Positions 18,069 through 54,440 of a DNA stretch of 64,000 bases are shown here, piece by piece. Each line of letters opens with the position of its first letter. Position 1 is the first letter of the stretch. The stretch lies in the IMG/VR virus record IMGVR_UViG_3300022935_000005, positions 216,914 to 280,913 of that record, one strand, 5' to 3'. Position numbers and translations under genes: made by a program. A model generated the notes under the pieces. The model saw only the letters and a program-made list of their open reading frames with translations, was not told the origin of the DNA and searched no databases.

Positions 18069-18077
18069 TTGCTCGAC

Positions 18078-18111
18078 AATCGTGCAAAGGTGCACCCACT
18101 TAGTGTATAAT
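18078..18111 (+). promoter_or_regulatory. Repeated promoter copy
   Basis: AATCGTGCAA-N18-TATAAT. Confidence 0.75.
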
Positions 18112-18115
18112 ATAG

Positions 18116-19015
18116 ATGTTGGTGGGGCTGATCCCCCAACACTGGAGAGTGCTCATGGACATCATCGTTACCGACAAGATCACCGCCGTCTGGGGCCGCG
18201 ATGTTACCGGCGTCAAGTACGTCCTCAACATCATTGAGACCGAAAACCTGACTCTGCCCCGCACCGCCGCCACCGGTCTCACCGGTGCCGACCTGGGCTG
18301 GACTGCCTACCCCACGGCGCGGGTGACCCTCGACCGTCGGGCGCGATGACGCGCTATGATGATACCACCGGGCCTGCGCCGGGCACGCTTGTCGCTAACT
18401 GCAACGAGTTCAGCGCTTGTTACGGGAGTGTTGGCCTTGTCATTGAGGAAAACCGGTCGACGCTCGCCGCTCTCGTTTACTTTTTTGTTGACCAGAAAAT
18501 GCGACCTGAACGCTGGGTGTACTGGCGACACTTGTGCGATGTGGAGGATGTAGATGACGCGCAACTCACTTGACTTTTTCTCTGGTCGATCACAGGATGG
18601 GTTTGACCGCTTTGATCCGGATCCCTATGTGACCCAAACCCGGGACCACTTCCTGGCGCTGGTCGGCGGCGAGTTTGATTACTACGGTGCTGACGGTGCC
18701 GAGCATGAGTTCAAGATTGACGGCATTGTCTTCAGGGTCCTTGAGGATCCCCAAGACGGGTACCGAAGCTGCCTGGGCGTGATCGAGTACAGCCCCGACC
18801 AGAGCCGCGGGATCTTCTTCACTCAACCTCTGGCGCGAGTCCGGCTGGAACAGTACGACTTGTACAAGGGCGATGACGTCTACAACGAGGCGTGTCAAGG
18901 GTACCGGTTGGTCGACGTTGATGACGCTCACGTCTGGCTTGAGTTCGGGACTGACAACTACAATGACTACTACCCGATATTCATCTTCCGGCACTGGGCA
19001 AAACCGCCGGCATAG
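18116..19015 (+). CDS. Three small hypothetical ORFs (about 18116-18349, 18346-18573, 18554-19015)
   Basis: Overlapping ORFs downstream of the promoter, G+C-rich codons. Confidence 0.5.
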
Positions 19016-19022
19016 TTTTGAA

Positions 19023-19056
19023 AATCGTGCAAAACGCACTCGCTCTATGGTATTAT
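19023..19056 (+). promoter_or_regulatory. Repeated promoter copy
   Basis: AATCGTGCAA-N18-TATTAT. Confidence 0.75.
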
Positions 19057-19535
19057 AATGATGTTGGTGGGGATTGGACCCCACTCACGAAACAAGAGGT
19101 GACAATGCGTTGCAACTACAATTGGGTTCAGGTTCGCCGGCGTGGCGAGTGGGTTGACAACGATGAGGGGTATAACTACCGTTACTGCCCGTGCTGCGCT
19201 CGGACCACCGAGCATGATCTCGACAAGTGCGTTCCCTGTGACGACCGGCGCGCCCGCGCCCGGCGGCGCTAGGGGGTGGTGATGAAGACTGCTGAGGTTC
19301 ACGTTTCTTTTGACGGCTCTGACTGGCGCAACCGGTTCACGATGCGGAGCCCGACAGGTCGTGTTGTCACTCTGCATTGCAACGGCAAGTGGAGCAAGAT
19401 GAGCCGGGAGCTGCGGCGCCTCGTCAATAAGTACCAGTTCGCAGACGCGGCAGACATTCCCTGGGGTAGTACACGGAAAGAAACTGTTACTTACGACGTG
19501 ATGGCTGAGATCCTGAGCCTCAGCAAGGTGTACTA

Positions 19536-20057
19536 ATGGAGCTCAACGTCGGAGACATCGTCACCTGCAACTGCGAGGCGAAGACGTGGTACCAGGGAAT
19601 CCCTGGCATCATTGTCGAGATTGACGCGCTCAAGGACGTTCATGTCCTCTATGACAACGGTCGGGTCATTCGCCTTGCCCGTTCTGGGTTGGTGCTGGCA
19701 TGAAGGTCGGTGATGTTGTTCTCATGATCGGTGTTCGGGGCATGGGGGTCGAAGTCACAGCTGTTGTGGGAGTCATCATGGCACCCTGGAAGATTGATGA
19801 CTGGTGGGAGGTCATGACACCGCATCACGGTATCATTCACTGGCCTGAGAGTCAGATGCAGAGAGTGGAGATGGGCGATGATGAAACCCGGTGATCTTGT
19901 GTACGATCATGACCTGGATATGATGGGCCTTGTGATCAATGAGTGGGCAAAGGGGGAGAAGTCAACACTGTTCCAGGTCATGTTCAGCACCAGCTTCCTC
20001 ACCATCTGCTCAAGTTCGGACCCAAGCACGGAGGTGATTAGTGAAAATCAGAACTAG
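19536..20057 (+). CDS. Three tandem small SH3/KOW-like ORFs (19536-19703, 19700-19894, 19881-20057)
   Basis: Starts MELNVGDIV, MKVGDVVL, MKPGDLVY; coupled stop/start junctions; two were read by hand because they fall below the ORF-track cut-off. Confidence 0.6.
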
Positions 20058-20379
20058 CGCGCTTGACGGCGAGACGCTCGTCATTGAGATCGAAGAGGGA
20101 GACGACAACGAGCTTGTTCGGCTGCTTGACGGACCTCGTCCCAACGGCTTTGCTGTGTTCGGTCCTGAGGTCCCGGCACCTATTGCCGTCATTGACGGTC
20201 GGATCCTCAACACGGGTCTGACACCCGATCATTTGCTTGCCGTCGAGGCTCACGAGCTCGGGCACATCCACGAAAATACGATTGTTGAGCGCGTTGCAGA
20301 ACAGTTCGCTGTCGACTTGCTTGAAGAGCTGGGTTTGGTGGAGGCTCGGCAGATCTTGCTCGCGAGGGGTATTGTCTAG
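20041..20379 (+). CDS. Small zincin-like (HExxH) protein
   Basis: AVEAHELGH...E.VAEQFA. Confidence 0.55.
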   Translation: MKIRTSALDGETLVIEIEEGDDNELVRLLDGPRPNGFAVFGPEVPAPIAVIDGRILNTGLTPDHLLAVEAHELGHIHENTIVERVAEQFAVDLLEELGLVEARQILLARGIV

Positions 20380-20723
20380 AATGCTCTCTGTACACACTTA
20401 CACGATCCGTTAATATTATCCAAGGAGAACAGCAATGCGTATCACAGTACCTTACACAGCCATCTTCCGCAACCCTGATGGGACCTATGAGTTCGAATAC
20501 ATCGAGCTCCCACAAGGGATTCGAGCAGCTCGACAGTGGTTGGACACTGACTTGCACTTGAACCTGCAGGGCGATGTTGAAGTCGCGGCCCTGATCCCTG
20601 GAGTTCACACGACAGATCTTCCAAAGAGAATGGAGAAAAACTGCGCGTAACCTGTATAAGAGACTGCTGAGAGTGCTATATTAGATATAAGGGCGCGCCC
20701 TACTCTTCTTAGGACACTCATCA

Positions 20724-21215
20724 ATGATACTCACACTACAGTTACTTCTCTTTGTGGGAGGGCACGCTATTAGCGCCCTCCTTTTTTATTTTTTCCACAG
20801 GGTGATCTTTCACGGACCCTTGGCACGCTATCCAGTTTTCAAACAGTGGGCTGCCATTCACACTCGGCATCACGCTCGTCCCGGCGAACCCGGAGCATTT
20901 TTCTTCACATGGTGGGCGAATGCTGCGATCTGGGCACTCACAGCATCAGCACTTTACGCTGCCCCCGCTTTCGGAGCCGGGATGATCAGCTTCTTCTGTG
21001 TGTATGCCTACAATCACATCTCGGCGCATGCTGGCTCTCCATCACGCCAGTCCCATCACCACCTGAGCCACCACTATGTTGCTCCAAAGGCGAACTTTTC
21101 AGTATCATATCCAGCGCTCGATAAGCTCTTTGGATCATACCACCGCGTAAGCCCGGATGCGTTAGCAGCGAAAATAATAAGAGTTCAGAGAAGTGAAAAG
21201 AAAAAATGTGATTGA
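20724..21215 (+). CDS. Fatty-acid hydroxylase / sterol desaturase family membrane protein
   Basis: His boxes HRVIFHG, HTRHH, YNHISAH, HHHLSHHY; NFSVS..LDKLFGS. Confidence 0.8.
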   Translation: MILTLQLLLFVGGHAISALLFYFFHRVIFHGPLARYPVFKQWAAIHTRHHARPGEPGAFFFTWWANAAIWALTASALYAAPAFGAGMISFFCVYAYNHISAHAGSPSRQSHHHLSHHYVAPKANFSVSYPALDKLFGSYHRVSPDALAAKIIRVQRSEKKKCD

Positions 21216-21385
21216 AGCCGTGGACTTCCGTTAACTTTGCGCGGAGTCCATTATATTTAAAAGCATGGTGGGATTGCATGGTCTGAGCCCACCGTAAAAT
21301 AAAATGAGACTGGACATAAGCACTTGCCTACGCATCCTGTTGAGCCCAGTCAGATTTTCGATGATTTAGACTTAGGAGTTCCAGA

Positions 21386-21613
21386 ATGAAAATCACAAAG
21401 AACCAACTTAGAAGAATTATCCGGGAAGAGCGCGCTAAGCTTGCACGTGGCAGAGCTGTTAACGAACAGTACTCACCGGGTCCCGAGGAGCGCCGCGCAC
21501 GGTCCGCGATCGACCAGATTGTCACAGACTTTCTAGAGAGCGATGAGGGTGATCCGGCGTTAATTGCAGAGATTCTGAGAGAGATTGCCAACGACGTCGA
21601 CGAAGAAATGTAG
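21386..21613 (+). CDS. MKITK-leader protein 1
   Basis: MKITKNQLRRIIREERAKLARGRAVNE. Confidence 0.8.
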   Translation: MKITKNQLRRIIREERAKLARGRAVNEQYSPGPEERRARSAIDQIVTDFLESDEGDPALIAEILREIANDVDEEM

Positions 21614-21628
21614 TGGTCTGGGGGCGGC

Positions 21629-22165
21629 ATGAGAATCACAAAGAGACAACTTAGAAGAATTATCCGAGAAGCGATTGATGTTGTTGATAGAGACACTGGC
21701 GAAGTTATGCGCTTTTCTGATGATAGTAGCGACAGCATGGCAGATCTTCCTGAAAAAGCCTGGCCTGACCTGGTAAAGCGGCTTGGGTTGAGCCCTAAAG
21801 ACGTGGGTCTTGATGCTGCCGGTAATCAAGGATTTGAGCTAGACCAGAATGAGTTTATACGCCTTGACAACGAGACTCGTGAAAAAGCCTACAACCGTAA
21901 GATGAAAAAACAGGCAGCTGCCTACAAGGCTGATCGGGAAAGATTGGATATCGACAATCTCCTCGAGAGACTCCGCTATTGGGCACAAGACGCAGCGTCT
22001 GATTACATGGCTGACAATCCAGACACCGACCTGCAGGATATCGCCTATGACCTTGCGGACGCTTGGCAATTCGCGTTCGAAGAAGATGAACGAGAAGAAC
22101 TGTTGTGGCACTTTGACGGTGACCTTAACGACCTTAAGATTTTCGCAGCGGAGAGTATGGGATGA
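21629..22165 (+). CDS. MKITK-leader protein 2
   Basis: MRITKRQLRRIIREA. Confidence 0.8.
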   Translation: MRITKRQLRRIIREAIDVVDRDTGEVMRFSDDSSDSMADLPEKAWPDLVKRLGLSPKDVGLDAAGNQGFELDQNEFIRLDNETREKAYNRKMKKQAAAYKADRERLDIDNLLERLRYWAQDAASDYMADNPDTDLQDIAYDLADAWQFAFEEDEREELLWHFDGDLNDLKIFAAESMG

Positions 22166-38875: not shown

Positions 38876-39814
38876 ATGTCATCAGTCAACCTTGGATATG
38901 CGTGTATCAACATGACGCTCCAGAAATCTCGCAAAGTTCAGTGCAATCGTGGCATGATCAAACGCACGTTTGCAGCAAAAGGCATCTCGTATGCTAGCGA
39001 GCTAGCTCTGAAGAATGTTACAGATCTTCGTGAAGTCATAAAGTGGAACAACGAAAACGGTGTCAGCGTTTATCGTATGACATCGTGCTTGTTTCCGTGG
39101 TTCTCAGAATATGACATGTTCGATCTTCCAGACATTGATAAGATCGCAGAGGTTATGGCAGACGCTGGTAAGATCGCTATGGATGCCGGACAGCGGCTAA
39201 GCTTCCATCCTGGCCCCTTCAACTGTCTGGCTTCACCAAGCGAAAGTGTAGTTCTTAAGACCATCAAAGAGCTTAATGATCATGCCGCGCAGATGGACCT
39301 CATGGGTCTACCAGCCTCCCCCATGGCTAAGATTAATATCCATGTTGGTGGAGCATATGGTGAGCATGACAAAGCACTGGAGAGGTTCTGTAAGAACTTC
39401 GAACGTCTTGGTGAAACTACTCGAGCTCGGCTGACTGTGGAAAATGACGACAAGCCCGCCTTATATTCTACCAAGATGCTGGTTGAAGGTGTCTCGAATC
39501 GAGTTGGGGCTCCAGTAGTCTTCGACTCTCATCACCATGAGCTAGGCCCGCAGGATTTGGATTACCACGATGCGTTCCATCTTGCTCGTGAAACTTGGGA
39601 AAAGCGCAGTGCCAAGCAGCAGTGTCACCATTCAAACTCTCGTAAGAACTACGAAGACCCTACCGCGAACGCAGTAGCGCACTCTGACTGGTACTATACT
39701 CCTTTCGAGAGCTTTGGTAAGCAGGTAGATGTTGTTCTAGAATGTAAGAAGAAAGAAGTTGCTCTATTCAAATACAGGAATGATTTCGTCGACAGTCTTC
39801 AAAAGGTGGCATAA
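38876..39814 (+). CDS. uvsE: UV DNA damage endonuclease
   Basis: LGYACIN, YRMTS.LFP, RLSFHPGPF.CLASP, INIHVGG, LTVENDDK, VFDSHHH, HSD. Confidence 0.92.
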   Translation: MSSVNLGYACINMTLQKSRKVQCNRGMIKRTFAAKGISYASELALKNVTDLREVIKWNNENGVSVYRMTSCLFPWFSEYDMFDLPDIDKIAEVMADAGKIAMDAGQRLSFHPGPFNCLASPSESVVLKTIKELNDHAAQMDLMGLPASPMAKINIHVGGAYGEHDKALERFCKNFERLGETTRARLTVENDDKPALYSTKMLVEGVSNRVGAPVVFDSHHHELGPQDLDYHDAFHLARETWEKRSAKQQCHHSNSRKNYEDPTANAVAHSDWYYTPFESFGKQVDVVLECKKKEVALFKYRNDFVDSLQKVA

Positions 39815-41746: not shown

Positions 41747-41972
41747 AAAGCGCCATATGGCTAAGGCTTTAAGCTGGCGGGCTGTCGGTACACTAGACAC
41801 AATGCTTGTGAGCTGGATAGTGACCGGCGATGCGTTGGTGGGATTATCAATAGGCCTCTTCGAAATAGTTTCAAAAACAGCTCTTTATTATTTTCACGAA
41901 AGAGTGTGGTATAGACTGTCTGACTTCGGTCTAGACAAAGAAAACACAGGGAAGGAAAACCAAACTAAATGA
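41736..41972 (+). CDS. DUF2061-like membrane protein
   Basis: KALSWRAVGTLDT...KTALYYFHERVW. Confidence 0.85.
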   Translation: MVSRKRHMAKALSWRAVGTLDTMLVSWIVTGDALVGLSIGLFEIVSKTALYYFHERVWYRLSDFGLDKENTGKENQTK

Positions 41973-42577
41973 AAGCAACGAACTTGCACTATCACTCAGA
42001 AACTGTGACGACAGAAGCGAAAGCTGCGAGAAATGGGCATAACCCATGCGTGATTTGGCTTACTGGACTGTCTGGTTCAGGAAAATCAACCATAGCCAAC
42101 GCCTTAGAGTCCACTTTATTTGGGATGGGTTTACAAACTCATCTTCTGGACGGTGATAACGTGAGGATGGGTCTAAACTCAGATCTGGGGTTTTCGCCTG
42201 AAGATAGGGCTGAAAACATCAGGCGGATCGGTGAAGTCGCAAACCTCTTCGCTCAAGCAGGTACAATCGTGATAACAGCATTTATATCTCCATATGAAAG
42301 CGACCGTTCGATTGCCAGAAGTGCAAGTAAACAAGACTTCCTTGAAGTGCACGTCCATGCAGATCTAGAAACTTGCGAATCTAGAGACCCAAAAGGATTG
42401 TATAAAAAAGCTCGGGCCGGGGTGATTAAAGGTTTTACAGGTATTGACGCTCCCTATGAAGCGCCGGACCTGGAGAGAGAGAACACTACTGTTGTTGACA
42501 CAAGTGTGTTGACAGTTCAAGAGTGTGTAGATTTAATAATCAAAGAATTAAGAGAGATGAAAGTGATTGGAGCATAA
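41969..42577 (+). CDS. cysC: Adenylyl-sulfate (APS) kinase
   Basis: WLTGLSGSGKST, LDGDNVR.GL..DLGFS..DR.ENIRR, FISPY, RDPKGLYKKA, FTGIDAPYEAP. Confidence 0.95.
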   Translation: MKATNLHYHSETVTTEAKAARNGHNPCVIWLTGLSGSGKSTIANALESTLFGMGLQTHLLDGDNVRMGLNSDLGFSPEDRAENIRRIGEVANLFAQAGTIVITAFISPYESDRSIARSASKQDFLEVHVHADLETCESRDPKGLYKKARAGVIKGFTGIDAPYEAPDLERENTTVVDTSVLTVQECVDLIIKELREMKVIGA

Positions 42578-42971
42578 GATGAGAAGAGCAATGTTCGTAG
42601 GAAGATGGCAACCACTACATAATGGTCATAAGTGGTTAATAGGTCAAAAGTTGGATGAGGGAGTTCCAGTCCTAATATGTGTAAGAGACATTCCTCCTGA
42701 TGAAAAGAACCCATTCACAACAGAGCAAACAGTCGAGATGCTTGAGACTGCATATGCTGATCAGGATGTTGTTGTGATGGCTATCCCCGACATTGAGAGC
42801 GTGAATTACGGACGTGGGGTAGGATATGGCATCGTTGAACACGTGCCACCGCAGGATATTGGGTTCATTTCAGCGACTGATATCCGTGCAAAGATCTCAA
42901 CGGGAGATGATTCTTGGAGAGAGAAAGTTGACCCCAAAATCCACGATCTGGTGATCCAGGGACTAAGCTGA
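42567..42971 (+). CDS. Minimal HIGH-type nucleotidyltransferase (NadM/cytidylyltransferase-like)
   Basis: MFVGRWQPLHNGH, ISATDIR. Confidence 0.8.
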   Translation: MEHKMRRAMFVGRWQPLHNGHKWLIGQKLDEGVPVLICVRDIPPDEKNPFTTEQTVEMLETAYADQDVVVMAIPDIESVNYGRGVGYGIVEHVPPQDIGFISATDIRAKISTGDDSWREKVDPKIHDLVIQGLS

Positions 42972-44246: not shown

Positions 44247-44726
44247 ATGACATCATTCGCAGATAAGATCAAGAACCTCAACGTCGCTACTGACACTTTC
44301 GTAACTCTCACCTACGAAGAGGGTGCTGACGTTTTCCACTTTAACGAGACAGAAATTGAGACAGCGCTATCAGAGACTAACGTCGTTGAAACTCTCTGTT
44401 CCCTTCTTCTAACAAAGGGGCTCGATGTCCGAGACTCGTGGCAGGGCGAAAGTATTATTCAGAATTTGCGTGATCAAGACCTGTTAGAGGATTATGAGCG
44501 GGGCTCATTTGATTTCGAGTCTTACCTTGTAGAGACGATCAAGGAAAACTTCTACGATGTAGAGCTTGTAGATTACTCTACTGAGAAATACGATCACAAG
44601 CGTGGGTTTACGACGCTGACTGCAACTGTCAAGGTTCCAGTTGAGAACTTTTTAGCAATTGACCCTGCATGTTCAGAGTGGACGGTTTCTGTAGAAACTG
44701 ACGCTGGTACTCTTACACTTTCTTGA
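44247..44726 (+). CDS. Hypothetical protein, paralog of the C-terminal part of 50151-50867
   Basis: EEGADVFHFN...YERGSFDFESY...STEKYDHKRGFTTLTA. Confidence 0.7.
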   Translation: MTSFADKIKNLNVATDTFVTLTYEEGADVFHFNETEIETALSETNVVETLCSLLLTKGLDVRDSWQGESIIQNLRDQDLLEDYERGSFDFESYLVETIKENFYDVELVDYSTEKYDHKRGFTTLTATVKVPVENFLAIDPACSEWTVSVETDAGTLTLS

Positions 44727-45581: not shown

Positions 45582-45872
45582 CCGCGTCGCTGGTGTTGTT
45601 GTTGGCCAGCTTACCTGCCGTTGAATGCCCTCGCTGGTTACCAGGAACAGATCAGGTTCTTCCTCCGCAAGTCCACCTGACGCCAGACCAACAGTTATCT
45701 AATAACCTTCGATGCTATTGCGAATTCGTAAAGCCCGCCGAGAGGGAGTGCGCACGAAATAATCCTCTAGACCAGTGTAAGCAGCGGACTCTAGAATGGA
45801 TAAATCGAAACCTTAGATTGAATACTTCTGGCAATGTTCCCGGCGTCCCACGACGGCTAAGGATGATATCTG

Positions 45873-46238
45873 TTGAGCCGTAAAGGGTTTGCGCTAGTGA
45901 CCGTATTATTTCTAGCGGCAGTGATTGTGTCTGGTGCATATCTAGTTTGGTCGATGGTGAACACAGATCAACAGATTGTACTCAACACCCGCAAAATATC
46001 TTTAGCAAGGGCAGCAGCGCAATCAGGCCTCAACCATTTTGTTGCTCTCGGCCTGTCTGACTCTGACGTGTCTGATCGGTTCGTGATACCAGAGACTAGC
46101 CTATCAAATAACACTACCTATGAAGTCATCGCGACTTGGATCGATCAACAAACACTCTTGGTAGTCAGCACGGGAAAATACAAAAAGAATGGTATGACTT
46201 TATTCTCATATCCCATGAGAGCAGTCTTTGGAAGATAG
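45873..46238 (+). CDS. PilX-like (minor pilin/pseudopilin K-type N-terminus) protein
   Basis: RKG-FALVTVLFL prepilin-like site; ...ARAAAQSGL. Confidence 0.7.
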   Translation: MSRKGFALVTVLFLAAVIVSGAYLVWSMVNTDQQIVLNTRKISLARAAAQSGLNHFVALGLSDSDVSDRFVIPETSLSNNTTYEVIATWIDQQTLLVVSTGKYKKNGMTLFSYPMRAVFGR

Positions 46239-46830
46239 TTTGTAATCTGCTACTATTTCTTTTATATTTTATATTATAGGGCAAATCACTAAGGAGGCCA
46301 CATGAGACACGATACGATTGTTGAAATTACTCCCGACGGCAGACCAGCTTTGCGGCTGGTAATCGTTCCAGACAGCTACTCTAGACCTCCAGAGAATGAC
46401 CACCCAGAACCAGAAAGTGTAGTAATCATTTCCTACGAAGAAGATGACCCTTACGTCGTGAAGGAAAATACCGTCACTTGGGAAGTCTAATGAAGCCCGG
46501 CGACTTAGTGAGGTTTCACCAGTGGGGTGATTTAGCTGATGTTAACGACTGGTCAACTACCCCGAAGTCTAAAGTCGGTGTTCTGATAGAGCACAATAAG
46601 CTCTTCGGTCACGTCGACATCTTGTATGAAGGTAATGTCATAAGAGAGCGCTCTGCTTTCGTAGAAAAAGCTGGAAAACGAGATTTAGCCAGAGAAGAAG
46701 ATGAATTGCCAAACTGAGCCTTTTTGTAGTTTCTGCGGTGAAGAGATGCCCCAGGGCTCACGTACGTTGGGCCAGATTTTTTGTAACTTGCTTTGTCAGC
46801 TTAAAGCTGATCCTATAGAACCGGTGACGC

Positions 46831-47076
46831 ATGAAGAAAGAAAAGGTAGACCACCCTTCCCACTACAACAAGGGGAAGATAGAAGTAATTGACGCTATCG
46901 AAGATTGGGATCTCAATTTCTCTGAAGGCAACGTCATAAAGTATGTCGCAAGACATCGTTTCAAAGGCGAACCGCTTGAAGACCTAAGGAAAGCAGAGTG
47001 GTATATTCAGCGCCTTATTAGAAATTTAGAAAAAAAACGTGAACAAGAGTTGTCAAATCGCTATACTCAATTATGA
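46831..47076 (+). CDS. DUF3310 / nucleotide-kinase-like phage protein
   Basis: VDHPSHY..G.IEVIDAI, FSEGNVIKY..R...KG..EDL.KA.WY. Confidence 0.85.
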   Translation: MKKEKVDHPSHYNKGKIEVIDAIEDWDLNFSEGNVIKYVARHRFKGEPLEDLRKAEWYIQRLIRNLEKKREQELSNRYTQL

Positions 47077-47489
47077 AGAGAGGAATAGCATTTTTGATAG
47101 TAGCGCTGTGTGCAGGCGCCGAAGTTGCACATGCAGATGTGATAAACACTGTAGACGATAATTGGAATAAGCATTGTAAGAAATGCCATGGCGTCGACGG
47201 AGAAGCGACAAAGATTGGGCTAAAGCTCAAGGCTCCCCCCGACTTATTCTCGGCTGTTGGGGCAAAATCAAGAGATGTCATAACTGACTATATTGAAAAC
47301 GGCAAAAACAAAATGCCGAAATATAGAAAGAAGCTCTCAACCGAAGAAATAGCAGCGCTGGTAGAGTTTGTTGAGTACGCGTCTCTTACGAAGAGAATGC
47401 GTGAAAATGAAGACAGGATAGATTCGACTCTGGAGCAGATTAAAAAAGATTATAAAAATTTGCCCGAGTGTGACTCTGTTACTCAATAA
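47073..47489 (+). CDS. Class I c-type cytochrome (c6/c553-like)
   Basis: Signal peptide, CKKCH haem site, GKNKMP axial Met, LSTEEIAALVEFV. Confidence 0.88.
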   Translation: MKRGIAFLIVALCAGAEVAHADVINTVDDNWNKHCKKCHGVDGEATKIGLKLKAPPDLFSAVGAKSRDVITDYIENGKNKMPKYRKKLSTEEIAALVEFVEYASLTKRMRENEDRIDSTLEQIKKDYKNLPECDSVTQ

Positions 47490-47498
47490 GGGGGACTC

Positions 47499-48209
47499 AT
47501 GAATAAATTGTCTATGATCGTAGGCGGTTTGGTACTACTGTTTTCTTCTCTTGCTAACGGTGCTGAAAAACTAGAGTATCAAATAAAAGTTCTCAACGTC
47601 GACTTTGGAGATGCTACACTATACACTTCTGAGGAACGCTTGTATGGTGAGATGAAGACTAATGATAAGTGGGGTAGCTTATACGCTGTTGATAACAAGA
47701 TGGCAACGTGGTTATCTCCTGAGGATTCACCGAAGAAGACAGAAATAGTATATAGAAAGCCCAGCAGAGTCATTAAATTTGAGCTCTTTTTTACCGCTGT
47801 GAACAATGTAAAAGTGAAGCTTTCAAGGCCTCATAAAAATCCCAAGTCCTATGTGACAAAGTCAAAGAGTGAAGTCTATGACTTTCTTACAATGCTCGCG
47901 ATTATGAGAAAAAAAGTGGGAGCCGATGAGACTGTTTTCTCAGTGATCACAGGTAAGAAGATTTATGACGTCGTGTTTACAAAGCAGAAGGATCAGAGTA
48001 TTACGACTTTATTGGGGCCCAAGGAAGCGGCGGTATATGATATCGTTGTGACGAGACCTGGAAAATTCCGACAAGAAATGAGAGTTTGGTTTGAGAAGAA
48101 TCCCGAGGCAACCCCCTTGAAGTTGGCTGGTAAAACCAAGCTCGGCGCTTTTGATGTGTCGATCCTAAAGCGCTCCCTCAACACGAATCAAGAAAGTTAT
48201 CAAAAATGA
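47499..48209 (+). CDS. Secreted DUF3108-like protein
   Basis: Signal peptide; L.YQI...DFGDA; RVWF...P..L. Confidence 0.6.
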   Translation: MNKLSMIVGGLVLLFSSLANGAEKLEYQIKVLNVDFGDATLYTSEERLYGEMKTNDKWGSLYAVDNKMATWLSPEDSPKKTEIVYRKPSRVIKFELFFTAVNNVKVKLSRPHKNPKSYVTKSKSEVYDFLTMLAIMRKKVGADETVFSVITGKKIYDVVFTKQKDQSITTLLGPKEAAVYDIVVTRPGKFRQEMRVWFEKNPEATPLKLAGKTKLGAFDVSILKRSLNTNQESYQK

Positions 48210-48496
48210 AGATTACGCTTACAAAGGATGAAGTTGAAAAACTTATAAGGACGCTCGACTGGGTCAACTTTGCAACTCAAGATACTGAGGAGTCAAGAGA
48301 GCAAATTAAGACCATAATCGCAAAGCTAGCGGTTGGACTAAAGAATGCGAGACAAACAACAGAGCTGAAGATTGATATTGTAGATGTCTAGTGAATAATT
48401 AAACACAGTTCCCGGAACCCCTAAGTTTGTAATCGGGTGGAGGGCAGACATCAACACGGCTTGAGCTTAACAGCTTGCCGTTATAAAGGACAGACG

Positions 48497-49843
48497 ATGA
48501 GGTTCATTTTTCTTAGTGTTATTGCACTTAGTTCTCTTACGTTCCCCGCATATTCACAGGATATCAGCGACAGTGAGACGTCATATTCTGGAGCTACAAT
48601 ATTAGAGGGAGACACCGACGTCTTCTTTTTTGATTTTGAGCCTATCAATGATCCGGACGGAGAAACAGATCCCTACGCATTTTTTGAGGGTAACACTCTG
48701 TATGCGGGAAATTCAGACCAGTACGGAAATACAGTAGATGCTATCATCGAATTCTTCTGGTTCGAATCCTCAATTGATCGTGGTTCTGATTTCTATGTTG
48801 CCGTTATCAAGACGAGAGTCACTCCTGGCGATGATTGCCAATGGGCTCCGTTTTCGTGGGCGGATGGAGTCAAGTGTAGGTTATGGACAGACCAGTGGCA
48901 GGACTGGGGGGAACATCCGGTGATGTCGGTCGAAGCCCATACTGATATATCCCTTGAACAAGGTGCGTTCAGGTGGGACTGGTCCATCCCTTTTGAAACG
49001 TATGGTATCGATGCTTATGGGCAAGTCACACTTAAGAATGAGTATGGGTTGGGTATTGAGTCTGAAGGCGCCGCAGTCGCCCACGGTGAATATCAGCTTG
49101 ACGAAGAGGGTAATGTAGAAGCAGAGGGTGAAGTACAAATCAAAGGGTTCGCTAATGAAGAGTACAGTGTTAAGACCCAGTACAACATTACGCTCTGGGA
49201 GTGGGAGATCTTTGTTGATGGACGAGCTGATCTGATGGCTTGGGACATGTACCTAAACCTTTCTGCTCGAGATGAACAGTCGGCTTACCATGAGTATTTC
49301 CTCAGCATTCAAGTTGCAGAAGGAGAGATGTTTACACTCAACGAAATCAAGATTCTTTCAAATTTCGATACGGGATGGTACAACCCAATTCACCATGAAG
49401 TGGGTTTAAGCATCGGACCCATCATGATAAATCGACCCTTCTACGAAATCGTAACGCCTGAAGAGCCAGAGGAAGAGCCAGAGCAGAACCCAGGAAAGAG
49501 ATACGAATTTCCCGTCTTGCCAGTTCCAGATGAGCAATCTGAGCCTGATCAGGTCGACATTGACGCTCCTTCGATGATGTCTGAAACACGAGGAGAGAGC
49601 GATCCCGTAGCCTCTGAGGCTTCAAAGGAAGCTCAAGAGACGCAGCAGGATGAGTTTAGCGGGCTTAGAGATATGTCATGGGATTATTTTGATGGGGGCC
49701 AGAGCGTAGAGTCTCCAGAAGCGCCGCCGCCCACTGAAACTATATACTCTAATGGATCTGGCTGCACCACCGCTAGTTCTGCTCCTTCACTTTTCATGTT
49801 CCTATTCATGATTCTGCCTCTAGTTGCCCGAAGCAAACATTAA
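48497..49843 (+). CDS. Secreted acidic protein with MYXO-CTERM-like C-terminus
   Basis: Signal peptide; E/P-rich stalk; GSGCTTASS plus TM segment plus ARSKH. Confidence 0.65.
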   Translation: MRFIFLSVIALSSLTFPAYSQDISDSETSYSGATILEGDTDVFFFDFEPINDPDGETDPYAFFEGNTLYAGNSDQYGNTVDAIIEFFWFESSIDRGSDFYVAVIKTRVTPGDDCQWAPFSWADGVKCRLWTDQWQDWGEHPVMSVEAHTDISLEQGAFRWDWSIPFETYGIDAYGQVTLKNEYGLGIESEGAAVAHGEYQLDEEGNVEAEGEVQIKGFANEEYSVKTQYNITLWEWEIFVDGRADLMAWDMYLNLSARDEQSAYHEYFLSIQVAEGEMFTLNEIKILSNFDTGWYNPIHHEVGLSIGPIMINRPFYEIVTPEEPEEEPEQNPGKRYEFPVLPVPDEQSEPDQVDIDAPSMMSETRGESDPVASEASKEAQETQQDEFSGLRDMSWDYFDGGQSVESPEAPPPTETIYSNGSGCTTASSAPSLFMFLFMILPLVARSKH

Positions 49844-50150
49844 TCTGTAAACTCTCATTCCCGCCTCTATAATAAAACAGCAACTATAAAACGATTCCGT
49901 AAATACAGAAAGTGAACTGATTGAAAGGTCATGTAATGGCTTGGACAAAAGAAACGCTGCTCGACAGCTTTTATCGCAAGAAGGGCAAAGCGCTGAAACA
50001 AGAAAAGAGCTTGCTAAAAATTAGAATGAACAGGGGGGACATCACACACGCTGAATACCTTGAGATCTTAGAAGAAACTAAAGAATACTATGCACAGTGG
50101 AAAGACCACAAAGAACCAAAGACACGTCAACGACGACAAGGGTTAAGATA

Positions 50151-50867
50151 ATGAGTACAGATTTCGCAGCAAGAATGGCAAAGATCAAAGCAGCAGAACC
50201 TTTTAAGGTTGGTGCAAAAGTAACACATAACGGAGATATCGGCACAGATGCGGAAGGTACTGTGTACGAGATATCAGTTCAGCAAGGGGTAGGTGCGCGC
50301 ATCTGGCTGGATCCGTATCGAAGCGGCACTCCATGTAGTTTTGAGGAGCTAGCTCTAGTCTCGACTGCAGTTAGTCGACGAGAGAAACTGAACAATACCT
50401 TCGACAAAACAGAGGTATCGGGTGATACCCGAGTCGAACTCTTCATGGAGGATGGCGCGGATGTTATTCACTACAACGACACTCAAGACGAAACCGTAAT
50501 GGAGGAGACAACTGTGATCGAGAGCTTGGTGGAGGCATCTCGTTCCGGTATTAAGTTTGAAGAAGACCTGATTCAGACACTTCGGGACTGGGACATGCTG
50601 GAAGACTACGAGCGCGGTTCGTACGAATTTGACAGCTACTGTTTAGAAAAGATTAAGGAGAATGCATATGACTTCTGCGACTTTATCGATTTCAGCACAG
50701 AACAGTACGATCACAAACGAGGTTATACAACTTTGACAGCACGTCTTTATACTACAGTAGATAACTTGAGGTCGGCTAACGAAGGACAAGTCAATGCGTT
50801 GTCAGGTTGGTCAGCAAAGTTTGAGTCGAAGGCTGTCGGTAACAGCACGATCACGATTGAAATTTAA
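50151..50867 (+). CDS. Hypothetical protein: KVGAKV barrel fused to a 44247-type domain
   Basis: EDGADVIHYN...YERGSYEFDSY...STEQYDHKRGYTTLTA. Confidence 0.7.
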   Translation: MSTDFAARMAKIKAAEPFKVGAKVTHNGDIGTDAEGTVYEISVQQGVGARIWLDPYRSGTPCSFEELALVSTAVSRREKLNNTFDKTEVSGDTRVELFMEDGADVIHYNDTQDETVMEETTVIESLVEASRSGIKFEEDLIQTLRDWDMLEDYERGSYEFDSYCLEKIKENAYDFCDFIDFSTEQYDHKRGYTTLTARLYTTVDNLRSANEGQVNALSGWSAKFESKAVGNSTITIEI

Positions 50868-52331: not shown

Positions 52332-54440
52332 ATGACCAACAGAAGACTAGCAGCTTCATTTTTCTTTCTTGCTGCTATCGGGTGCTCAGAAGATCAAGTC
52401 TCTCAGATGACCGTCGACTCTGGTGTAAGGACTATCACTCAAGATGACAGCAGTGCTGCAGATGTAATGATAGTCACAGTTCAAGACGCCTCTATAGATA
52501 TGTTCATTGATCCATGTCTCGACATCCAGAACACCGATGATATGTACTGTGAGTGTCACCCCAGATGCTGTCAAAATCAAACATGGTACTGCCCTCCTAG
52601 AGGTACTGAAGTTTTGGCAAAAGATGCTGTCTTAGACATCTGCGATACTGACTATGTACCGTGTGATAGAAACATTGATGAATCATGTCCTCCGGCAGAA
52701 ATTATCTACGAAAGTTCTTGTAACCATATGTTTGACTGTCCACCGGGCATAGACGAAGACTTTACAGTTTTCTATGATTGTGAGGTGGATGGTAACCCGG
52801 GCACTCAGAGGGTGCGTTGTGACAAGGGAAGGTTAGACTATGGACAGTGCGTCGTTTGTGTCTTGGCGGACGAGATCTGTGACGGCCAAGATAATGACTG
52901 CGATGGCGAAATAGACGAACACCAATTGAATGAATGTGGTCAATGTGGATTGTTACCCCAAGATGCTTGTGATGGGCTCGATAACGACTGCGATGGTCTT
53001 GTTGATGAAGATCTGGTTCAAGCATGTGTCACTACATGTGAGCGTGGTGTAGAGGTTTGTGAAAACGGAGCCTGGGTGGGTTGTACAGCAAGACAGCCAT
53101 CCGAAGAAATCTGCGACGGCTTCGATAATGACTGCGACGGTTTGATTGATGAAGAGCTTAATTGCGGATGCCCACCTGAGATGGTCGGCGCGTTGCTACC
53201 CTGTATGGAACCACCACTAACTTGTGGGATGGGATTCAAGACGTGCGAGTGTGAAGATGAAGACTGCTTGACAACTCGAATGTCTGACTGCTTCGCTTTG
53301 TGCGCTTGGTTACCGGCAGAGATAGTCCAGCATGATGAGCCAGACACTTGTGACAGATACGCAGGAATGCCTGTTAATCCAGAAGTTTGTAATAACTTCG
53401 ACGAAGACTGTGACGGTTTAATCGATGAGAGACTAAACAAGCCTTGCTATTCTGGTCCTCAAGATACTATAGGGGTAGGTGTGTGTCGAGGTGGTAGTCA
53501 AGTCTGCGAACAAGGTCGCTGGTACGGAGAAACAACAGCCGGCAGTTTTGTTCACGATTTTTGTGCAGGTGAGATCGTACCCAGCAGAGAGATTTGCGAC
53601 GGTAGTGATAATGACTGCGATGGTGTTACCGACTTTGGTCGAGAGATTCCAGACACAGACATTCTTTTCATTCTTGATTGGTCTGGATCTATGGCATACC
53701 AGATCAACGCTGTAAAGATGGCGATGAATAGATTTGCAAACCATTTCGCTGCAGAGGGTAAGTTAAAATGGGGATTAATAACCGGACCTCGGATTTTTCC
53801 AAGAGAAGGTCAAGATCCTTCACAGGCTAAACAATACCTGAGGTTAGAAACTGACATAACATCATTCTCAGATTTTATCGCTGCATTCTCTGCAGCTGGT
53901 GCTTTTGAGACTGGAGCAACCCATGAAATGTTAATTGACGCGCTGCTGCTTTCTGTCGCGACTATTTCATCTAACATGACTTATGACCTGTCAACCGCAC
54001 AGTGGTTCAATGGTTTCTCTGACGCCGGATCGATTCCGAGTCTACAAGACTTTCGAATAAACTGGCGACATAACGCTGACAGGGTTATCGTAGTGTTTAC
54101 AGACGAGGAGGATCAGTCTTTCCTCGTACCGAAAGTGACTAGCGAACAAGCTATAGCAGCCCTCGAGGGATCACCAGATACTACACTTTATGTGTTCACA
54201 CAAAGATACTTTTTTTCGAGGTGGGACGATTATGTAGACCCGACAGGTGGAAGACTGTTCCCATTATCTTCTAACTCTGAGCAGATGTATGATGATCTCA
54301 TGTCTATACTCGATGAGATCTGCCTTAACGCAGGCTCTTCTGTACAGATGGAAGAAGCTTCGTATAATGGTAATATGTCAAGCCAGCTATACAATCCAGT
54401 GATTTCAAGATATAATTTTTCTGGTGGCTATTGCTACTAA
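52332..54440 (+). CDS. Cys-rich lipoprotein with repeated E.CDG.DNDCDG..DE (putative metal-binding/MopE-like) motifs and C-terminal VWA domain
   Basis: Lipobox AAIGC; five CD/NxxDxDCDG units; DILFILDWSGSM, VIVVFTDEEDQS. Confidence 0.85.
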   Translation: MTNRRLAASFFFLAAIGCSEDQVSQMTVDSGVRTITQDDSSAADVMIVTVQDASIDMFIDPCLDIQNTDDMYCECHPRCCQNQTWYCPPRGTEVLAKDAVLDICDTDYVPCDRNIDESCPPAEIIYESSCNHMFDCPPGIDEDFTVFYDCEVDGNPGTQRVRCDKGRLDYGQCVVCVLADEICDGQDNDCDGEIDEHQLNECGQCGLLPQDACDGLDNDCDGLVDEDLVQACVTTCERGVEVCENGAWVGCTARQPSEEICDGFDNDCDGLIDEELNCGCPPEMVGALLPCMEPPLTCGMGFKTCECEDEDCLTTRMSDCFALCAWLPAEIVQHDEPDTCDRYAGMPVNPEVCNNFDEDCDGLIDERLNKPCYSGPQDTIGVGVCRGGSQVCEQGRWYGETTAGSFVHDFCAGEIVPSREICDGSDNDCDGVTDFGREIPDTDILFILDWSGSMAYQINAVKMAMNRFANHFAAEGKLKWGLITGPRIFPREGQDPSQAKQYLRLETDITSFSDFIAAFSAAGAFETGATHEMLIDALLLSVATISSNMTYDLSTAQWFNGFSDAGSIPSLQDFRINWRHNADRVIVVFTDEEDQSFLVPKVTSEQAIAALEGSPDTTLYVFTQRYFFSRWDDYVDPTGGRLFPLSSNSEQMYDDLMSILDEICLNAGSSVQMEEASYNGNMSSQLYNPVISRYNFSGGYCY

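What the first reader, a model, noticed from the sequence alone, without database searches (positions are those of the whole stretch)
47073..47489. Phage-encoded periplasmic c-type cytochrome
Seen: signal peptide, a single CKKCH, distal GKNKMP Met and a C-terminal helical extension, coupled to a DUF3310 phage gene upstream and a DUF3108-like gene downstream. Established: class I cytochromes c need host Ccm or Res maturation and shuttle electrons. Inference: an uncommon auxiliary gene that could redirect host respiration during infection.
Basis: partly seen in the sequence, partly recalled or inferred. Interest (0 to 1): 0.62.

Follow-up and report, generated by a model that had tools for sequence, protein, structure and literature searches.

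The report
Jumbo-phage periplasmic cytochrome c with tail
A 281-kb salt-marsh jumbo phage really does encode an exported, single-haem cytochrome c that is conserved under strong selection in a clade of related phages, carries a phage-only C-terminal helix ending in a cysteine, and is usually paired with a lipid-carrier-like barrel protein, so it probably carries electrons in the infected host's periplasm, though its partner and host are unknown.

Summary
Window 47073-47489 (+) encodes a 138-aa protein with a Sec signal peptide, one CKKCH haem motif, a distal Met81 in GKNKMP, and a ~35-residue helical C-terminal extension. It overlaps the upstream DUF3310 gene by 4 nt (ATGA), and a DUF3108 gene starts 9 nt downstream.

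The contig is a bona fide jumbo myovirus: it has terminase, portal, major head, sheath and baseplate genes, and CheckV rates it 92% complete. This is its only CxxCH protein, and it has no cytochrome c maturation genes.

The protein is a class I cytochrome c, closest to Kuenenia c-552 kustc0562 (His/Met, +244 mV). It reaches no named equivalog cut-off.

It defines a family seen only on phage-like contigs (about 10 clusters at 50% identity) under strong purifying selection (dN/dS 0.02-0.12).

All 81 sampled cellular relatives lack the extension and the DUF3108 neighbour. Most precede a NapC/NirT multihaem cytochrome instead.

DUF3108 folds as a LolA/YmcC-like open barrel, and in one phage it is fused to MlaC.

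Most likely function: a host-matured periplasmic electron carrier. Its redox partner, the role of the tail and of DUF3108, and the host are unresolved.

Verdict: a new variant of a known kind, of moderate interest.

The parts
47073..47489 (+). Cytochrome c gene (138 aa): the whole feature
   Evidence: ORF. Pfam PF13442 51 bits and PF00034. AF2 pLDDT 82.5. Foldseek top hits are Kuenenia c-552 7o38/5mxy, then cytochrome c6. dN/dS 0.02-0.12.
47073..47135 (+). Sec signal peptide, residues 1-21 (MKRGIAFLIVALCAGAEVAHA | D)
   Evidence: Read from the sequence. The n/h/c regions and the A-x-A-type site are conserved in all 9 first-found homologues. It is not a lipobox: Leu at -1, and the Cys is not conserved.
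47175..47189 (+). Haem-attachment motif C35-K-K-C38-H39
   Evidence: Invariant in A1 and A6. It is the only CxxCH in an ORF of the 281-kb genome.
47301..47318 (+). G77-K-N-K-M81-P: distal (sixth-ligand) Met motif
   Evidence: Aligns residue for residue with GKNKMP of kustc0562, whose distal ligand is Met (PMC8388095). G77, K80, M81 and P82 are invariant in A1.
47382..47486 (+). C-terminal extension found only on phage-like contigs, residues 104-138: amphipathic heptad helix (L105, M109, I116, L120, I123, Y127, L130) ending in L-P-E-C133 (Cys codon 47469-47471)
   Evidence: Helix 90-128 in the model. Heptad stripe. Absent from 81/81 cellular homologues, which end 3-8 aa after the haem domain. 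Present with the LP(E/P)C motif in all ~10 full-length representatives of the exhaustive search.
46831..47076 (+). Upstream DUF3310 gene (81 aa); its stop overlaps the cytochrome start (ATGA)
   Evidence: Pfam PF11753 E=2e-18. Many PHROG hits. The same position is kept in L012, L108-L113.
47499..48209 (+). DUF3108 partner (236 aa): exported LolA/YmcC-like open beta-barrel
   Evidence: Pfam PF11306 44 bits. AF2 pLDDT 82.6, all-beta. Foldseek hits: DUF1849 6ntr, RseB, YmcC-like 3fzx/2in5, VioE, LolA, LppX/LprG. Adjacent to the cytochrome in both gene orders in seven cytochrome clusters. Fused to MlaC in L105.
48206..48391 (+). 61-aa ORF overlapping the DUF3108 stop; conserved only in the nearer relatives
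   Evidence: 52% identity in L012 and 44% in L108/L111. No family hit. Not homologous to the small ORFs in the swapped-order loci.
48500..49843 (+). Acidic, Trp-rich secreted protein (447 aa from M22) with a C-terminal GSGC + hydrophobic + RSKH anchor-like tail; a neighbourhood member, link to the cytochrome unproven
   Evidence: 79-85% identical homologues follow DUF3108 in L012, L108 and L111. Homologues of 33-34% identity (E 1e-45 to 1e-49) lie upstream of DUF3108-cytochrome in L014 and L019. No Pfam, NCBIfam, PHROG or Atlas hit.

Best explanation
This is a genuine phage gene for a small, Sec-exported, monohaem His/Met class I cytochrome c.

Shown: the sequence, fold, genomic setting and selection.

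Inferred:
- The apoprotein is exported to the periplasm of a diderm host.
- The host's own System I or System II machinery attaches haem to C35/C38, with H39 and M81 as axial ligands.
- The holoprotein acts as a soluble, probably high-potential, one-electron carrier that plugs into the host's periplasmic electron-transfer chain during infection. This would keep energy conservation going for a large, slow-replicating jumbo phage.
- In cells the nearest relatives are co-transcribed with a NapC/NirT-type multihaem quinol dehydrogenase, so a host enzyme of that kind is the best guess for its electron donor.
- The amphipathic heptad helix ending in Cys133 most likely mediates self-association (a disulfide-stapled coiled coil) or docking or tethering.
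- In this phage and its nearer relatives the cytochrome is co-expressed with an exported LolA/YmcC-like barrel (DUF3108). That barrel probably binds a hydrophobic ligand and works in the same compartment. It is not indispensable, because at least one more distant family member lacks it.
For: Identity as a cytochrome c:
- Pfam scores are above the cut-offs.
- 42% identity and TM 0.74 to the solved kustc0562, with matching CxxCH and GKNKMP motifs.
- That protein is a His/Met carrier of +244 mV.
- The AF2 model is confident.

Phage origin:
- Hallmark genes are present across the contig, and it is a virus record rated 92% complete.
- The same locus occurs in more than 13 DNA runs and in a second IMG/VR contig.
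- It is syntenic with a related ~274-kb phage.

Functional constraint:
- The haem residues are invariant and dN/dS is 0.02-0.12.
- The phage clade is monophyletic on a long stem.

Dependence on the host:
- No PF01578, PF05140 or PF03100, with positive controls registering hits.
- It is the single cytochrome c domain in the genome.

Cellular context:
- 61-65 of 80 relatives precede a ~5-haem NapC/NirT-like protein, including in a Chlamydiota MAG and a 'Deltaproteobacteria' MAG.

Tail:
- Absent in 81/81 cellular relatives and present in all full-length representatives.
- It has a heptad pattern.

Partner:
- Adjacency in both gene orders, a LolA-like fold, and a fusion to MlaC.

Possible transcription:
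- Contigs 100% identical to the locus in RNA libraries cover 45662-47476.
Against: - No haem attachment, redox potential, partner or phenotype has been measured.
- The host is unidentified, so it is unknown whether it has a matching chain or a NapC/NirT enzyme.
- The phage has no other respiratory gene that would point to a pathway.
- The genome arm is dominated by exported or envelope proteins, not energy-metabolism genes. That fits an envelope role at least as well.
- The RNA-library contigs cover the whole 5-kb stretch evenly in the best run and could be DNA carry-over.
- Haem-domain charge is not conserved across the family, so there is no conserved docking surface at that level.
- The complex prediction of cytochrome with DUF3108 gave no verdict.
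- L117 shows the cytochrome without DUF3108.
Confidence: 0.55

Rival explanations
1. Envelope or lipid-directed module. The cytochrome, the DUF3108 barrel and neighbouring exported proteins act on the host cell envelope rather than feeding respiration. Possible roles include redox chemistry on a lipid or quinone held by the barrel, a tethered electron conduit toward the outer membrane, or envelope remodelling, exclusion or lysis support.
For: - DUF3108 has the fold of periplasmic lipid and lipoprotein carriers.
- In L105 it is fused to MlaC, the phospholipid shuttle.
- In other phages the neighbours are lipoproteins and secreted Cys-rich proteins.
- This arm of the genome encodes SLT, an OmpA-like protein, a pseudopilin-like protein, an anchored acidic protein and a vWA lipoprotein.
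- The cellular NapC/NirT partner has been replaced.
- In a gonococcal mlaA mutant, a DUF3108 protein rises together with MlaC (PMC6424457).
Against: - No catalytic feature beyond an ordinary His/Met haem site.
- DUF3108 is absent next to the cytochrome in L117 and apparently in L118.
- No predicted contact between the two proteins (no verdict).
- Our phage has no MlaC or MlaD.
Confidence: 0.2
2. Another periplasmic redox role. The protein might donate electrons to a host cytochrome c peroxidase or nitrite/NO/N2O reductase for detoxification, or act as a haem or iron buffer, rather than supporting energy conservation.
For: - Small class I cytochromes serve many periplasmic reductases (established knowledge).
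- The closest solved relatives differ in partner specificity despite near-identical folds and potentials (PMC8388095).
- The habitat is salt marsh and estuary, where redox conditions fluctuate.
Against: - Nothing in the phage genome or neighbourhood points to a specific reductase.
- This reading is equally untested.
Confidence: 0.1
3. Non-functional passenger. The gene would be a captured host gene that is decaying or never receives haem.
For: - Some distant representatives lack the distal Met (P0156, P0208, P0276).
- Divergent SoxD genes lacking haem motifs are reported in other phages (PMC8190135).
Against: - dN/dS is 0.02-0.12.
- The haem ligands and signal peptide are invariant in the near family.
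- The gene is retained across phages whose synonymous sites are saturated.
- The clade is monophyletic on a long stem, so this is not a recent capture.
Confidence: 0.05
4. The contig is bacterial, or chimeric through misassembly, so the cytochrome is really a host gene.
For: - The contig has no terminal repeat and is classed as linear.
- It carries several cell-like metabolic genes, including PEPCK, IMPDH/GMP reductase and APS kinase.
Against: - A full set of myovirus hallmark genes is present, and 236 of 267 ORFs lie on one strand.
- The locus is reproduced with >=0.96 of its words in 13 DNA runs and on a second IMG/VR contig.
- Gene-by-gene synteny over 18 kb with a related ~274-kb phage contig.
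- GC content is uniform around the gene.
- No cellular genome among 185,579 species carries the tailed form.
Confidence: 0.02

Closest known systems
Kuenenia stuttgartiensis small c-552 cytochromes kustc0562/kustc0563 (PDB 7o38, 5mxy)
   Same: - Sec-exported monohaem class I fold.
- 42% identity over the haem domain.
- CxxCH and GKNKMP motifs in register.
- TM 0.70-0.74.
- These are His/Met carriers of +244 and +268 mV.
   Different: - They are ~85-aa mature proteins that end right after the core C-terminal helix.
- They have no 35-residue heptad extension and no terminal Cys.
- They are cellular (anammoxosome) proteins, not phage proteins.
- They have no DUF3108 neighbour.
Monohaem cytochrome c encoded upstream of a NapC/NirT-family multihaem cytochrome in Acidobacteriota (also in a Chlamydiota MAG and a 'Deltaproteobacteria' MAG)
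   Same: - The nearest cellular sequences found.
- 33-49% identity over residues ~30-100.
- Same size of haem domain, a signal peptide and the G-K-N-K-M-P motif.
   Different: - All 81 stop 3-8 residues after the haem domain.
- 61-65 of 80 are followed by a ~5-haem NapC/NirT-like protein, and none by DUF3108.
- They are separated from the phage clade by a long branch.
Cytochrome c6 / c553 (PetJ family)
   Same: Same class I fold. These are weaker sequence and structure matches.
   Different: - NCBIfam PetJ scores 37.6 bits against a cut-off of 135.
- There is no photosynthetic context.
- The phage protein has an extra C-terminal helix.
Previously reported phage-borne c-type cytochromes: SoxD in sulfur phages (PMC8190135) and a NapC/NirT multihaem cytochrome in amoC jumbo phages (bioRxiv 10.64898/2026.06.18.733297)
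   Same: These are c-type cytochrome genes carried on phage genomes and read as auxiliary metabolic genes that need host maturation.
   Different: - They are host-like subunits of defined pathways (Sox; quinol dehydrogenase) and group with host homologues.
- This one is a free-standing monohaem carrier with features seen only on phage-like contigs.
- It is not close to any sampled host lineage and has no pathway partner on the phage.
Cyanophage electron-carrier AMGs (plastocyanin, ferredoxin, PTOX)
   Same: The concept is the same: a phage supplies a small soluble electron carrier to sustain host electron flow during infection (established knowledge; PMC5082946 appeared in the search results).
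   Different: - A different protein family and cofactor.
- Those are near-copies of host genes in known hosts.
- Here the host and the chain are unknown.

Membership tests
Class I c-type cytochrome (Pfam PF13442 Cytochrome_CBB3 / PF00034 Cytochrom_C) | Profile score above the curated cut-off | tested here: met
   PF13442 51 bits against a cut-off of 27; PF00034 29.5 against 21.3. Reproduced on the genome.
Class I c-type cytochrome | Single N-terminal CxxCH with His as fifth ligand, and a Met sixth ligand ~40-50 residues downstream | tested here: met
   C35-K-K-C38-H39 and M81 in GKNKMP. These are invariant in the family and align with the same motifs of kustc0562.
Class I c-type cytochrome | All-alpha cytochrome c fold | tested here: met
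   AF2 pLDDT >90 over residues 31-130. The top 40+ Foldseek PDB hits are all class I cytochromes, TM by target up to 0.74 and probability 1.00, although E-values are only 1.7e-3 and weaker for this small fold.
Class I c-type cytochrome | Export signal for periplasmic maturation | tested here: met
   A typical Sec signal peptide with a conserved A-x-A site. Judged by eye, as no dedicated predictor was available.
Class I c-type cytochrome | Covalently attached haem | not testable with these tools
   Needs expression with ccm or ccs genes, plus haem staining and spectroscopy.
Cytochrome c6 PetJ (NF045930); c551 (NF045774); c550 (NF045773); PedF c-550 (TIGR04494); SorU (NF052248) | Equivalog score at or above the curated cut-off | tested here: not met
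   Scores against cut-offs: 37.6/135, 27.7/118, 27.1/125, 23.3/122 and 22.3/100 bits.
cbb3 oxidase subunit III CcoP (TIGR00782) | Dihaem, membrane-anchored subunit scoring above the cut-off and encoded with ccoNOQ | tested here: not met
   25 bits against a cut-off of 179.95. It has one haem motif and no oxidase context. The Pfam name 'CBB3' refers only to the domain.
Cellular monohaem cytochrome + NapC/NirT operon family | Adjacent downstream multihaem NapC/NirT-like gene; protein ends just after the haem domain | tested here: not met
   The phage has no other CxxCH ORF, the gene is followed by DUF3108, and it carries a 35-aa extension.
Auxiliary metabolic gene of a phage | Located on a bona fide viral genome, flanked by viral genes | tested here: met
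   Hallmark genes are present. A DUF3310 phage gene is immediately upstream. The locus is syntenic with related phage contigs.
Auxiliary metabolic gene of a phage | Expressed during infection and altering host metabolism | tested here: inconclusive
   Identical contigs occur in four RNA libraries, but strand, expression level and DNA carry-over cannot be judged from contigs. No host or phenotype data exist.
DUF3108 (PF11306), for the neighbouring gene 47499-48209 | Profile score above the cut-off; exported YmcC/LolA-like beta-barrel | tested here: met
   44.3 bits against a cut-off of 26. The fold matches 6ntr, 3fzx, 2in5, LolA and RseB. The Atlas look-alikes are all DUF3108.

The most novel reading that the evidence does not exclude
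The tailed cytochrome is not a respiratory booster. It would instead be the redox half of a phage-invented periplasmic device. Tethered or dimerised through its heptad helix and Cys133, it would work with a lipid-carrier-type barrel (DUF3108, in one phage fused to MlaC) on a membrane-derived hydrophobic substrate such as a lipid or quinone. That would be a phage-driven redox modification or electron tap at the host envelope, with no described counterpart in phage biology.
Probability: 0.15. Interest if true: 0.8.

Novelty: new variant of a known kind. Interest (0 to 1): 0.55.

Why it matters
Phage auxiliary genes for electron transport are well documented in cyanophages (plastocyanin, ferredoxin). 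For c-type cytochromes they are known only as host-like pathway subunits (SoxD, NapC/NirT).

This case is different. A free-standing soluble cytochrome c has become a lineage of its own on phage genomes. It is conserved under strong purifying selection across jumbo phages whose synonymous sites are saturated. It has gained a structural element, a heptad helix with a terminal Cys, that no sampled cellular relative has. It has also exchanged the cellular multihaem partner for a lipid-carrier-like barrel.

If it does carry electrons in infected cells, then some non-photosynthetic hosts in salt-marsh and estuarine sediments have their periplasmic electron flow rewired by phages. The family would also give a compact, easily expressed handle to test that.

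The DUF3108-MlaC fusion is a rare functional clue for DUF3108, a widespread family of unknown function.

Tried and rejected
- **Complex prediction**, mature cytochrome against mature DUF3108: ipSAE 0.06 and 0.00, below the mark. The tool gives no verdict, so this is not evidence either way.

- **Host inference** failed by every route tried:
  - TerL and major capsid protein are only 37-51% identical to phages of Flavobacterium, Microcystis and Rhodothermus.
  - PEPCK relatives are unnamed metagenome contigs, apart from one Pelagibacteraceae MAG bin at ~60%.
  - The T9SS C-terminal-domain search was uninformative because its control registered nothing.
  - The seven phage tRNAs were not compared further.

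- **amoC/pmoC**: absent, but the control also registered nothing.

- **MlaC and MlaD** elsewhere in the phage: absent.

- **A C-terminal sorting-domain model** for the 468-aa protein: no NCBIfam hit. The Atlas gave no usable hit.

- **Earlier reading corrected**: I first took the ~460-aa protein downstream in the swapped-order loci as the counterpart of the 468-aa protein (15-18% identity). tblastn showed the true homologue lies upstream.

- **The 61-63-aa ORFs** are not homologous between the two gene orders.

- **Haem-domain net charge** as a docking signature: it varies from -8 to +4 across the family, so no inference was drawn.

- **Promoter and terminator scans and Rfam** around the locus: nothing beyond chance.

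- **The careful maximum-likelihood tree** did not finish in the time allowed. Only the quick tree is reported, with 83 columns and many unresolved forks.

- **The genome-contig scan** is biased by its two peptide patterns and by MAG sampling. The predominance of Acidobacteriota is therefore not evidence for a donor or a host.

- No genetic code other than table 11 was used.
Full report
**1. The observation**

Window 47073-47489 (+) is an intact 138-codon ORF. Its product has these features:
- A canonical Sec signal peptide, MKRG / IAFLIVALCAGA / EVAHA|D.
- One haem-attachment motif, C35-K-K-C38-H39 (nt 47175-47189).
- A G77-K-N-K-M81-P motif.
- About 35 residues beyond the point where class I cytochromes normally end.

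Pfam places it in Cytochrome_CBB3 (E=1.8e-13, 51 bits, cut-off 27) and in Cytochrom_C.

The upstream ORF 46831-47076 is DUF3310 (E=2e-18), and its stop overlaps the cytochrome start (ATGA). The downstream ORF 47499-48209 is DUF3108 (E=2.5e-11). It has its own signal peptide and a GGGGGA ribosome-binding site in the 9-nt spacer.

**2. Is it a phage?**

The window is the last 64 kb of a single 280,913-bp contig (GC 0.449, no Ns). Of 267 ORFs, 236 lie on one strand. PHROG profiles identify:
- a helicase,
- terminase large subunit (C1:102294-103892),
- portal,
- major head protein,
- tail sheath,
- baseplate wedge,
- long-tail-fibre-like proteins,
- SbcCD, ribonucleotide reductase and GroEL.

The record is an IMG/VR virus record that CheckV rates 92% complete. 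TerL and the major capsid protein are 37-51% identical to those of Flavobacterium phage immuto, Microcystis phage Mel-JY01, Rhodothermus phage RM378 and metagenomic huge phages. That makes this a distant branch of the T4-like lineage.

The 5-kb stretch around the gene occurs nearly word for word in 13 salt-marsh DNA runs, and partly in estuary and freshwater runs. It also occurs on a second IMG/VR contig. It is collinear gene by gene over 18 kb with a related phage whose contigs reach 274 kb. GC content is even across the locus. Misassembly or a bacterial origin is therefore very unlikely.

**3. What the protein is**

The best solved sequence relative is Kuenenia stuttgartiensis cytochrome c-552 kustc0562 (7o38, E=3.4e-13). 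CxxCH and GKNKMP align residue for residue, and the c6 family follows more weakly.

An AlphaFold2 model built on the family alignment is confident, with pLDDT above 90 over residues 31-130. All of its top Foldseek PDB hits are class I cytochromes, with TM up to 0.74 and 42% identity to 7o38.

Kustc0562 and kustc0563 are soluble His/Met carriers of +244 and +268 mV, and their partner specificity is set by surface electrostatics (PMC8388095).

NCBIfam equivalogs for c6 PetJ, c551, c550, CcoP, PedF and SorU all score far below their cut-offs. The protein belongs to the superfamily but to no named family.

It is the only CxxCH ORF and the only PF13442 hit in the 281-kb genome. The phage has none of CcsA/CcmC/CcmF, ResB or CcmE, and the positive controls for those searches registered hits. 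Haem attachment must therefore be done by the host.

**4. A family seen only on phage-like contigs**

The word-index search found eight further clusters of 38-78% identity. The exhaustive profile search of 1.84 billion representatives gave 3,453 hits, but only about ten cover the whole profile (P0141-P0147, P0150, P0151, P0156). Essentially all the others match only the haem domain, profile positions ~25-98, and many are multi-domain proteins.

All full-length representatives share the long C-terminal helix and a terminal (D/N)Y..LP(E/P)C motif.

In the query the extension shows a clean a/d heptad stripe (Y102, L105, M109, I116, L120, I123, Y127, L130), followed by Cys133.

Every member whose context I could read lies among runs of small same-strand ORFs. 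These sit with typical phage genes: UvdE, DUF3310, MazG, HSP20, thymidine kinase and adenylosuccinate synthase.

Among phage relatives the haem ligands, W31, the TKIGL segment and KKL are invariant. dN/dS is 0.02-0.12 in every pair whose synonymous sites are not saturated.

A quick ML tree places the nine first-found phage sequences in one clade (SH-aLRT 95) on a stem of 1.75 substitutions per site, apart from 80 cellular sequences. This is an old, maintained phage lineage, not a recent capture.

Four catalogues of phage proteins do not contain it:
- 50,697 GenBank phage records by tblastn,
- PHROGs,
- BFVD structures, best E 0.41,
- IMG/VR by pattern scan, which found only the phage itself (limited by the patterns used).

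Full-text searches for phage- or virus-encoded cytochrome c found only SoxD in sulfur phages, a NapC/NirT multihaem protein in amoC phages, and an oxidase subunit report.

**5. Contrast with cellular relatives**

A scan of one genome per species (185,579 species) gave 194 relatives, and the best 80 were kept. These are mostly Acidobacteriota MAGs, plus a Chlamydiota MAG and a 'Deltaproteobacteria' MAG. This ranking is biased by the two peptide patterns used and by MAG sampling.

Identity is 33-49% and is confined to residues ~30-100. In all 81 cellular ORFs the match stops at profile position 97-98, and the protein ends 3-8 residues later. None has a DUF3108 gene within 5 kb.

Instead, 61-65 of 80 are followed, after a median gap of 107 nt on the same strand, by a ~482-aa protein. 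That protein has about five CxxCH motifs and a NapC/NirT N-terminal domain. The two non-acidobacterial MAGs show the same arrangement.

In cells, then, this subfamily of monohaem carriers is wired to a membrane quinol-dehydrogenase-type multihaem cytochrome. The phage version has lost that neighbour and gained the tail.

**6. The DUF3108 partner**

In the window and in six further cytochrome clusters, the cytochrome is directly adjacent to DUF3108. The clusters are P0002, P0003, P0004, P0006, P0007 and the 130-aa protein of L111.

Two gene orders occur. In the nearer relatives the order is cytochrome then DUF3108. In the more distant ones it is DUF3108 then cytochrome, with a 1-4-nt overlap.

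The DUF3108 proteins are exported, contain no Cys in our phage, and diverge faster than the cytochrome: 49% against 77% amino-acid identity for the same phage pair.

The AF2 model (pLDDT 82.6, pTM 0.79) is an open all-beta barrel. Its Foldseek matches are DUF1849 (6ntr, TM ~0.6), RseB, the YmcC-like proteins 3fzx and 2in5, VioE, LolA/LolB and LppX/LprG. This is the fold of periplasmic carriers of acyl chains and other hydrophobic ligands. It agrees with the literature note that DUF3108 has a YmcC fold (PMC4364669).

In L105 the partner is a 406-aa fusion of DUF3108 (residues 29-221) with MlaC (residues 252-402, E=4.5e-29), the periplasmic phospholipid shuttle.

The link is not universal. L117, a 48.7-kb phage-like contig, has the tailed cytochrome with no DUF3108 within 3.5 kb on either side. 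In L116 and L118/L119 the gene just upstream is instead a 105-111-aa Cys/Trp-rich predicted lipoprotein. The same lipoprotein precedes DUF3108-cytochrome in L014-L018, but it is absent from our phage.

A complex prediction for cytochrome with DUF3108 gave no verdict.

**7. Neighbourhood**

The arm of the genome around the gene is rich in exported or envelope proteins:
- SLT transglycosylase,
- an OmpA-like protein,
- a pseudopilin-like protein,
- the 468-aa acidic Trp-rich secreted protein with an anchor-like C-terminus (homologues in both phage subclades),
- a 702-aa predicted lipoprotein with MopE-type Cys repeats and a vWA-like motif.

This points to a diderm host, and it is the main reason to keep an envelope-directed role as the chief rival.

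**8. Expression**

Contigs assembled from four metatranscriptomic libraries are 99-100% identical to the locus. One 1,815-nt contig covers 45662-47476, which is almost the whole gene. Contigs show neither strand nor expression level, and DNA carry-over is possible. This is only suggestive.

**9. Mechanism and verdict**

Shown:
- It is a phage gene.
- It has an export signal.
- It has a complete class I haem site and fold.
- It is under strong purifying selection.
- The phage has no maturation genes.
- The tail is found only in the phage-contig family.
- It has a recurrent lipid-carrier-like neighbour.

Inferred: the host attaches haem, and the holoprotein shuttles single electrons in the periplasm during infection. 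Judging by its nearest solved relative, it probably works at high potential. By analogy with its cellular cousins, it possibly draws electrons from a NapC/NirT-type enzyme. The tail mediates self-association or tethering.

I put 0.55 on this reading as a whole. Identity as a phage-encoded cytochrome c is about 0.9, while the respiratory-support role is much less certain. I put 0.2 on an envelope or lipid-directed role for the module, and the remainder on other redox roles, decay or artefact.

The finding is real and uncommon. It is best classed as a new variant of a known kind: a class I cytochrome c and a phage electron-carrier auxiliary gene, with new phage-specific anatomy.

**10. Limits**

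- The host is unknown.
- There is no biochemical evidence.
- The tree is a quick one on 83 columns.
- The cellular sample is pattern-biased.
- The signal peptide was judged by eye.
- The homodimer hypothesis could not be tested.

Noticed in passing
L105:800-2020 (+): In a related phage-like contig the gene next to the cytochrome is a 406-aa fusion of DUF3108 (residues 29-221) with MlaC (residues 252-402, E=4.5e-29). This is a Rosetta-stone type clue linking the uncharacterised DUF3108 family to periplasmic phospholipid handling.
   Followed up: partly
L023-L102, about 100 nt downstream of each cytochrome (e.g. L028:5356-6804, L032:5411-6925, L095:5327-5821): In 61-65 of 80 cellular loci the small monohaem cytochrome is followed on the same strand by a ~482-aa protein with about five haem motifs and a NapC/NirT-family domain. 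The loci are mostly Acidobacteriota, plus a Chlamydiota MAG and a 'Deltaproteobacteria' MAG. This looks like a conserved two-gene electron-transfer unit.
   Followed up: partly
L014:6983-7309, L118:3184-3501, L116:252-587 (also L015-L018, L119): A 105-111-aa Cys/Trp-rich predicted lipoprotein family (lipobox, 6-8 Cys, motif C.(H/Y)(E/D)W.(Y/W)D.(W/Y).C.W) sits immediately upstream of the tailed cytochrome or of DUF3108-cytochrome in several phage contigs. It is absent from this phage. No family was assigned.
   Followed up: partly
window 48437-49843 (probable start 48500): An acidic, Trp-rich secreted protein with a Pro/Glu-rich linker and a C-terminal 'GSGC + hydrophobic + RSKH' tail that resembles a sorting or anchor signal. 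It has no hit in Pfam, NCBIfam, PHROGs or the Atlas. Homologues in the other phage subclade are fused to MopE-type repeats.
   Followed up: partly
window 52332-54440: A 702-aa predicted lipoprotein (lipobox AAIGC) with repeated CDGxDNDCDG 'MopE' metal-binding-type motifs (PF11617, E=2e-17) and a vWA-like DWSGSM motif near residue 455. It is conserved in related phages.
   Followed up: partly
window 1-1110 (full ORF C1:216551-218023, locus L115): A phage-encoded ATP-dependent PEP carboxykinase (490 aa, Pfam E=2e-139). Homologues of 65-79% identity lie on other jumbo-phage-sized contigs (274 kb), so it is a conserved central-carbon auxiliary gene of this clade.
   Followed up: partly
window 41969-42971, 17136-18068 and 5953-7890: A sulfation and nucleotide-activation set: APS kinase (E=3.5e-66), an adjacent cytidylyltransferase-like protein, a sulfotransferase, and a 645-aa protein with a cytidylyltransferase-like C-terminal part. 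This suggests the phage makes PAPS and sulfates some substrate.
   Followed up: no
window 7826-8962 and 38876-39814: An IMPDH/GMP-reductase family enzyme (E=2e-93; phrog_9582) and a UvdE UV-damage endonuclease (E=6e-54). UvdE is conserved in every related contig that was long enough to show it.
   Followed up: no
window 44247-44726 and 50097-50867: Two paralogous ORFs (about 46% identity over ~150 aa; shared ...LEDYERGS.(D/E)F.SY...STE.YDHKRG.TTLTA... block) flank the cytochrome module on either side. Their function is unknown.
   Followed up: no
window 45873-46238: A 121-aa protein with a prepilin-like N-terminus (MSRKGFALVTVLFLAAV...) that weakly resembles the minor pseudopilin GspK. It has a 71% identical homologue in L012.
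   Followed up: no
window 16000-22000: A GC-rich stretch (0.50-0.56 against 0.45 for the genome) that includes the sulfotransferase gene. It may be a more recently acquired segment.
   Followed up: no
C1:210284-215396 (L011:10284-15396), just upstream of the window: A cluster of seven tRNA genes (2x Met, Asn, Glu, Leu-CAA, Gln, Thr-TGT), the only tRNAs in the genome.
   Followed up: no
P0162, P0169, P0178, P0208, P0212, P0181, P0263, P0276 (e.g. L120:1430-1855): A second, more distant tier of ~140-170-aa monohaem cytochromes also has a C-terminal helical extension but no LPEC motif, and some lack the distal Met. The one context read (2.6 kb) is again small same-strand ORFs.
   Followed up: partly
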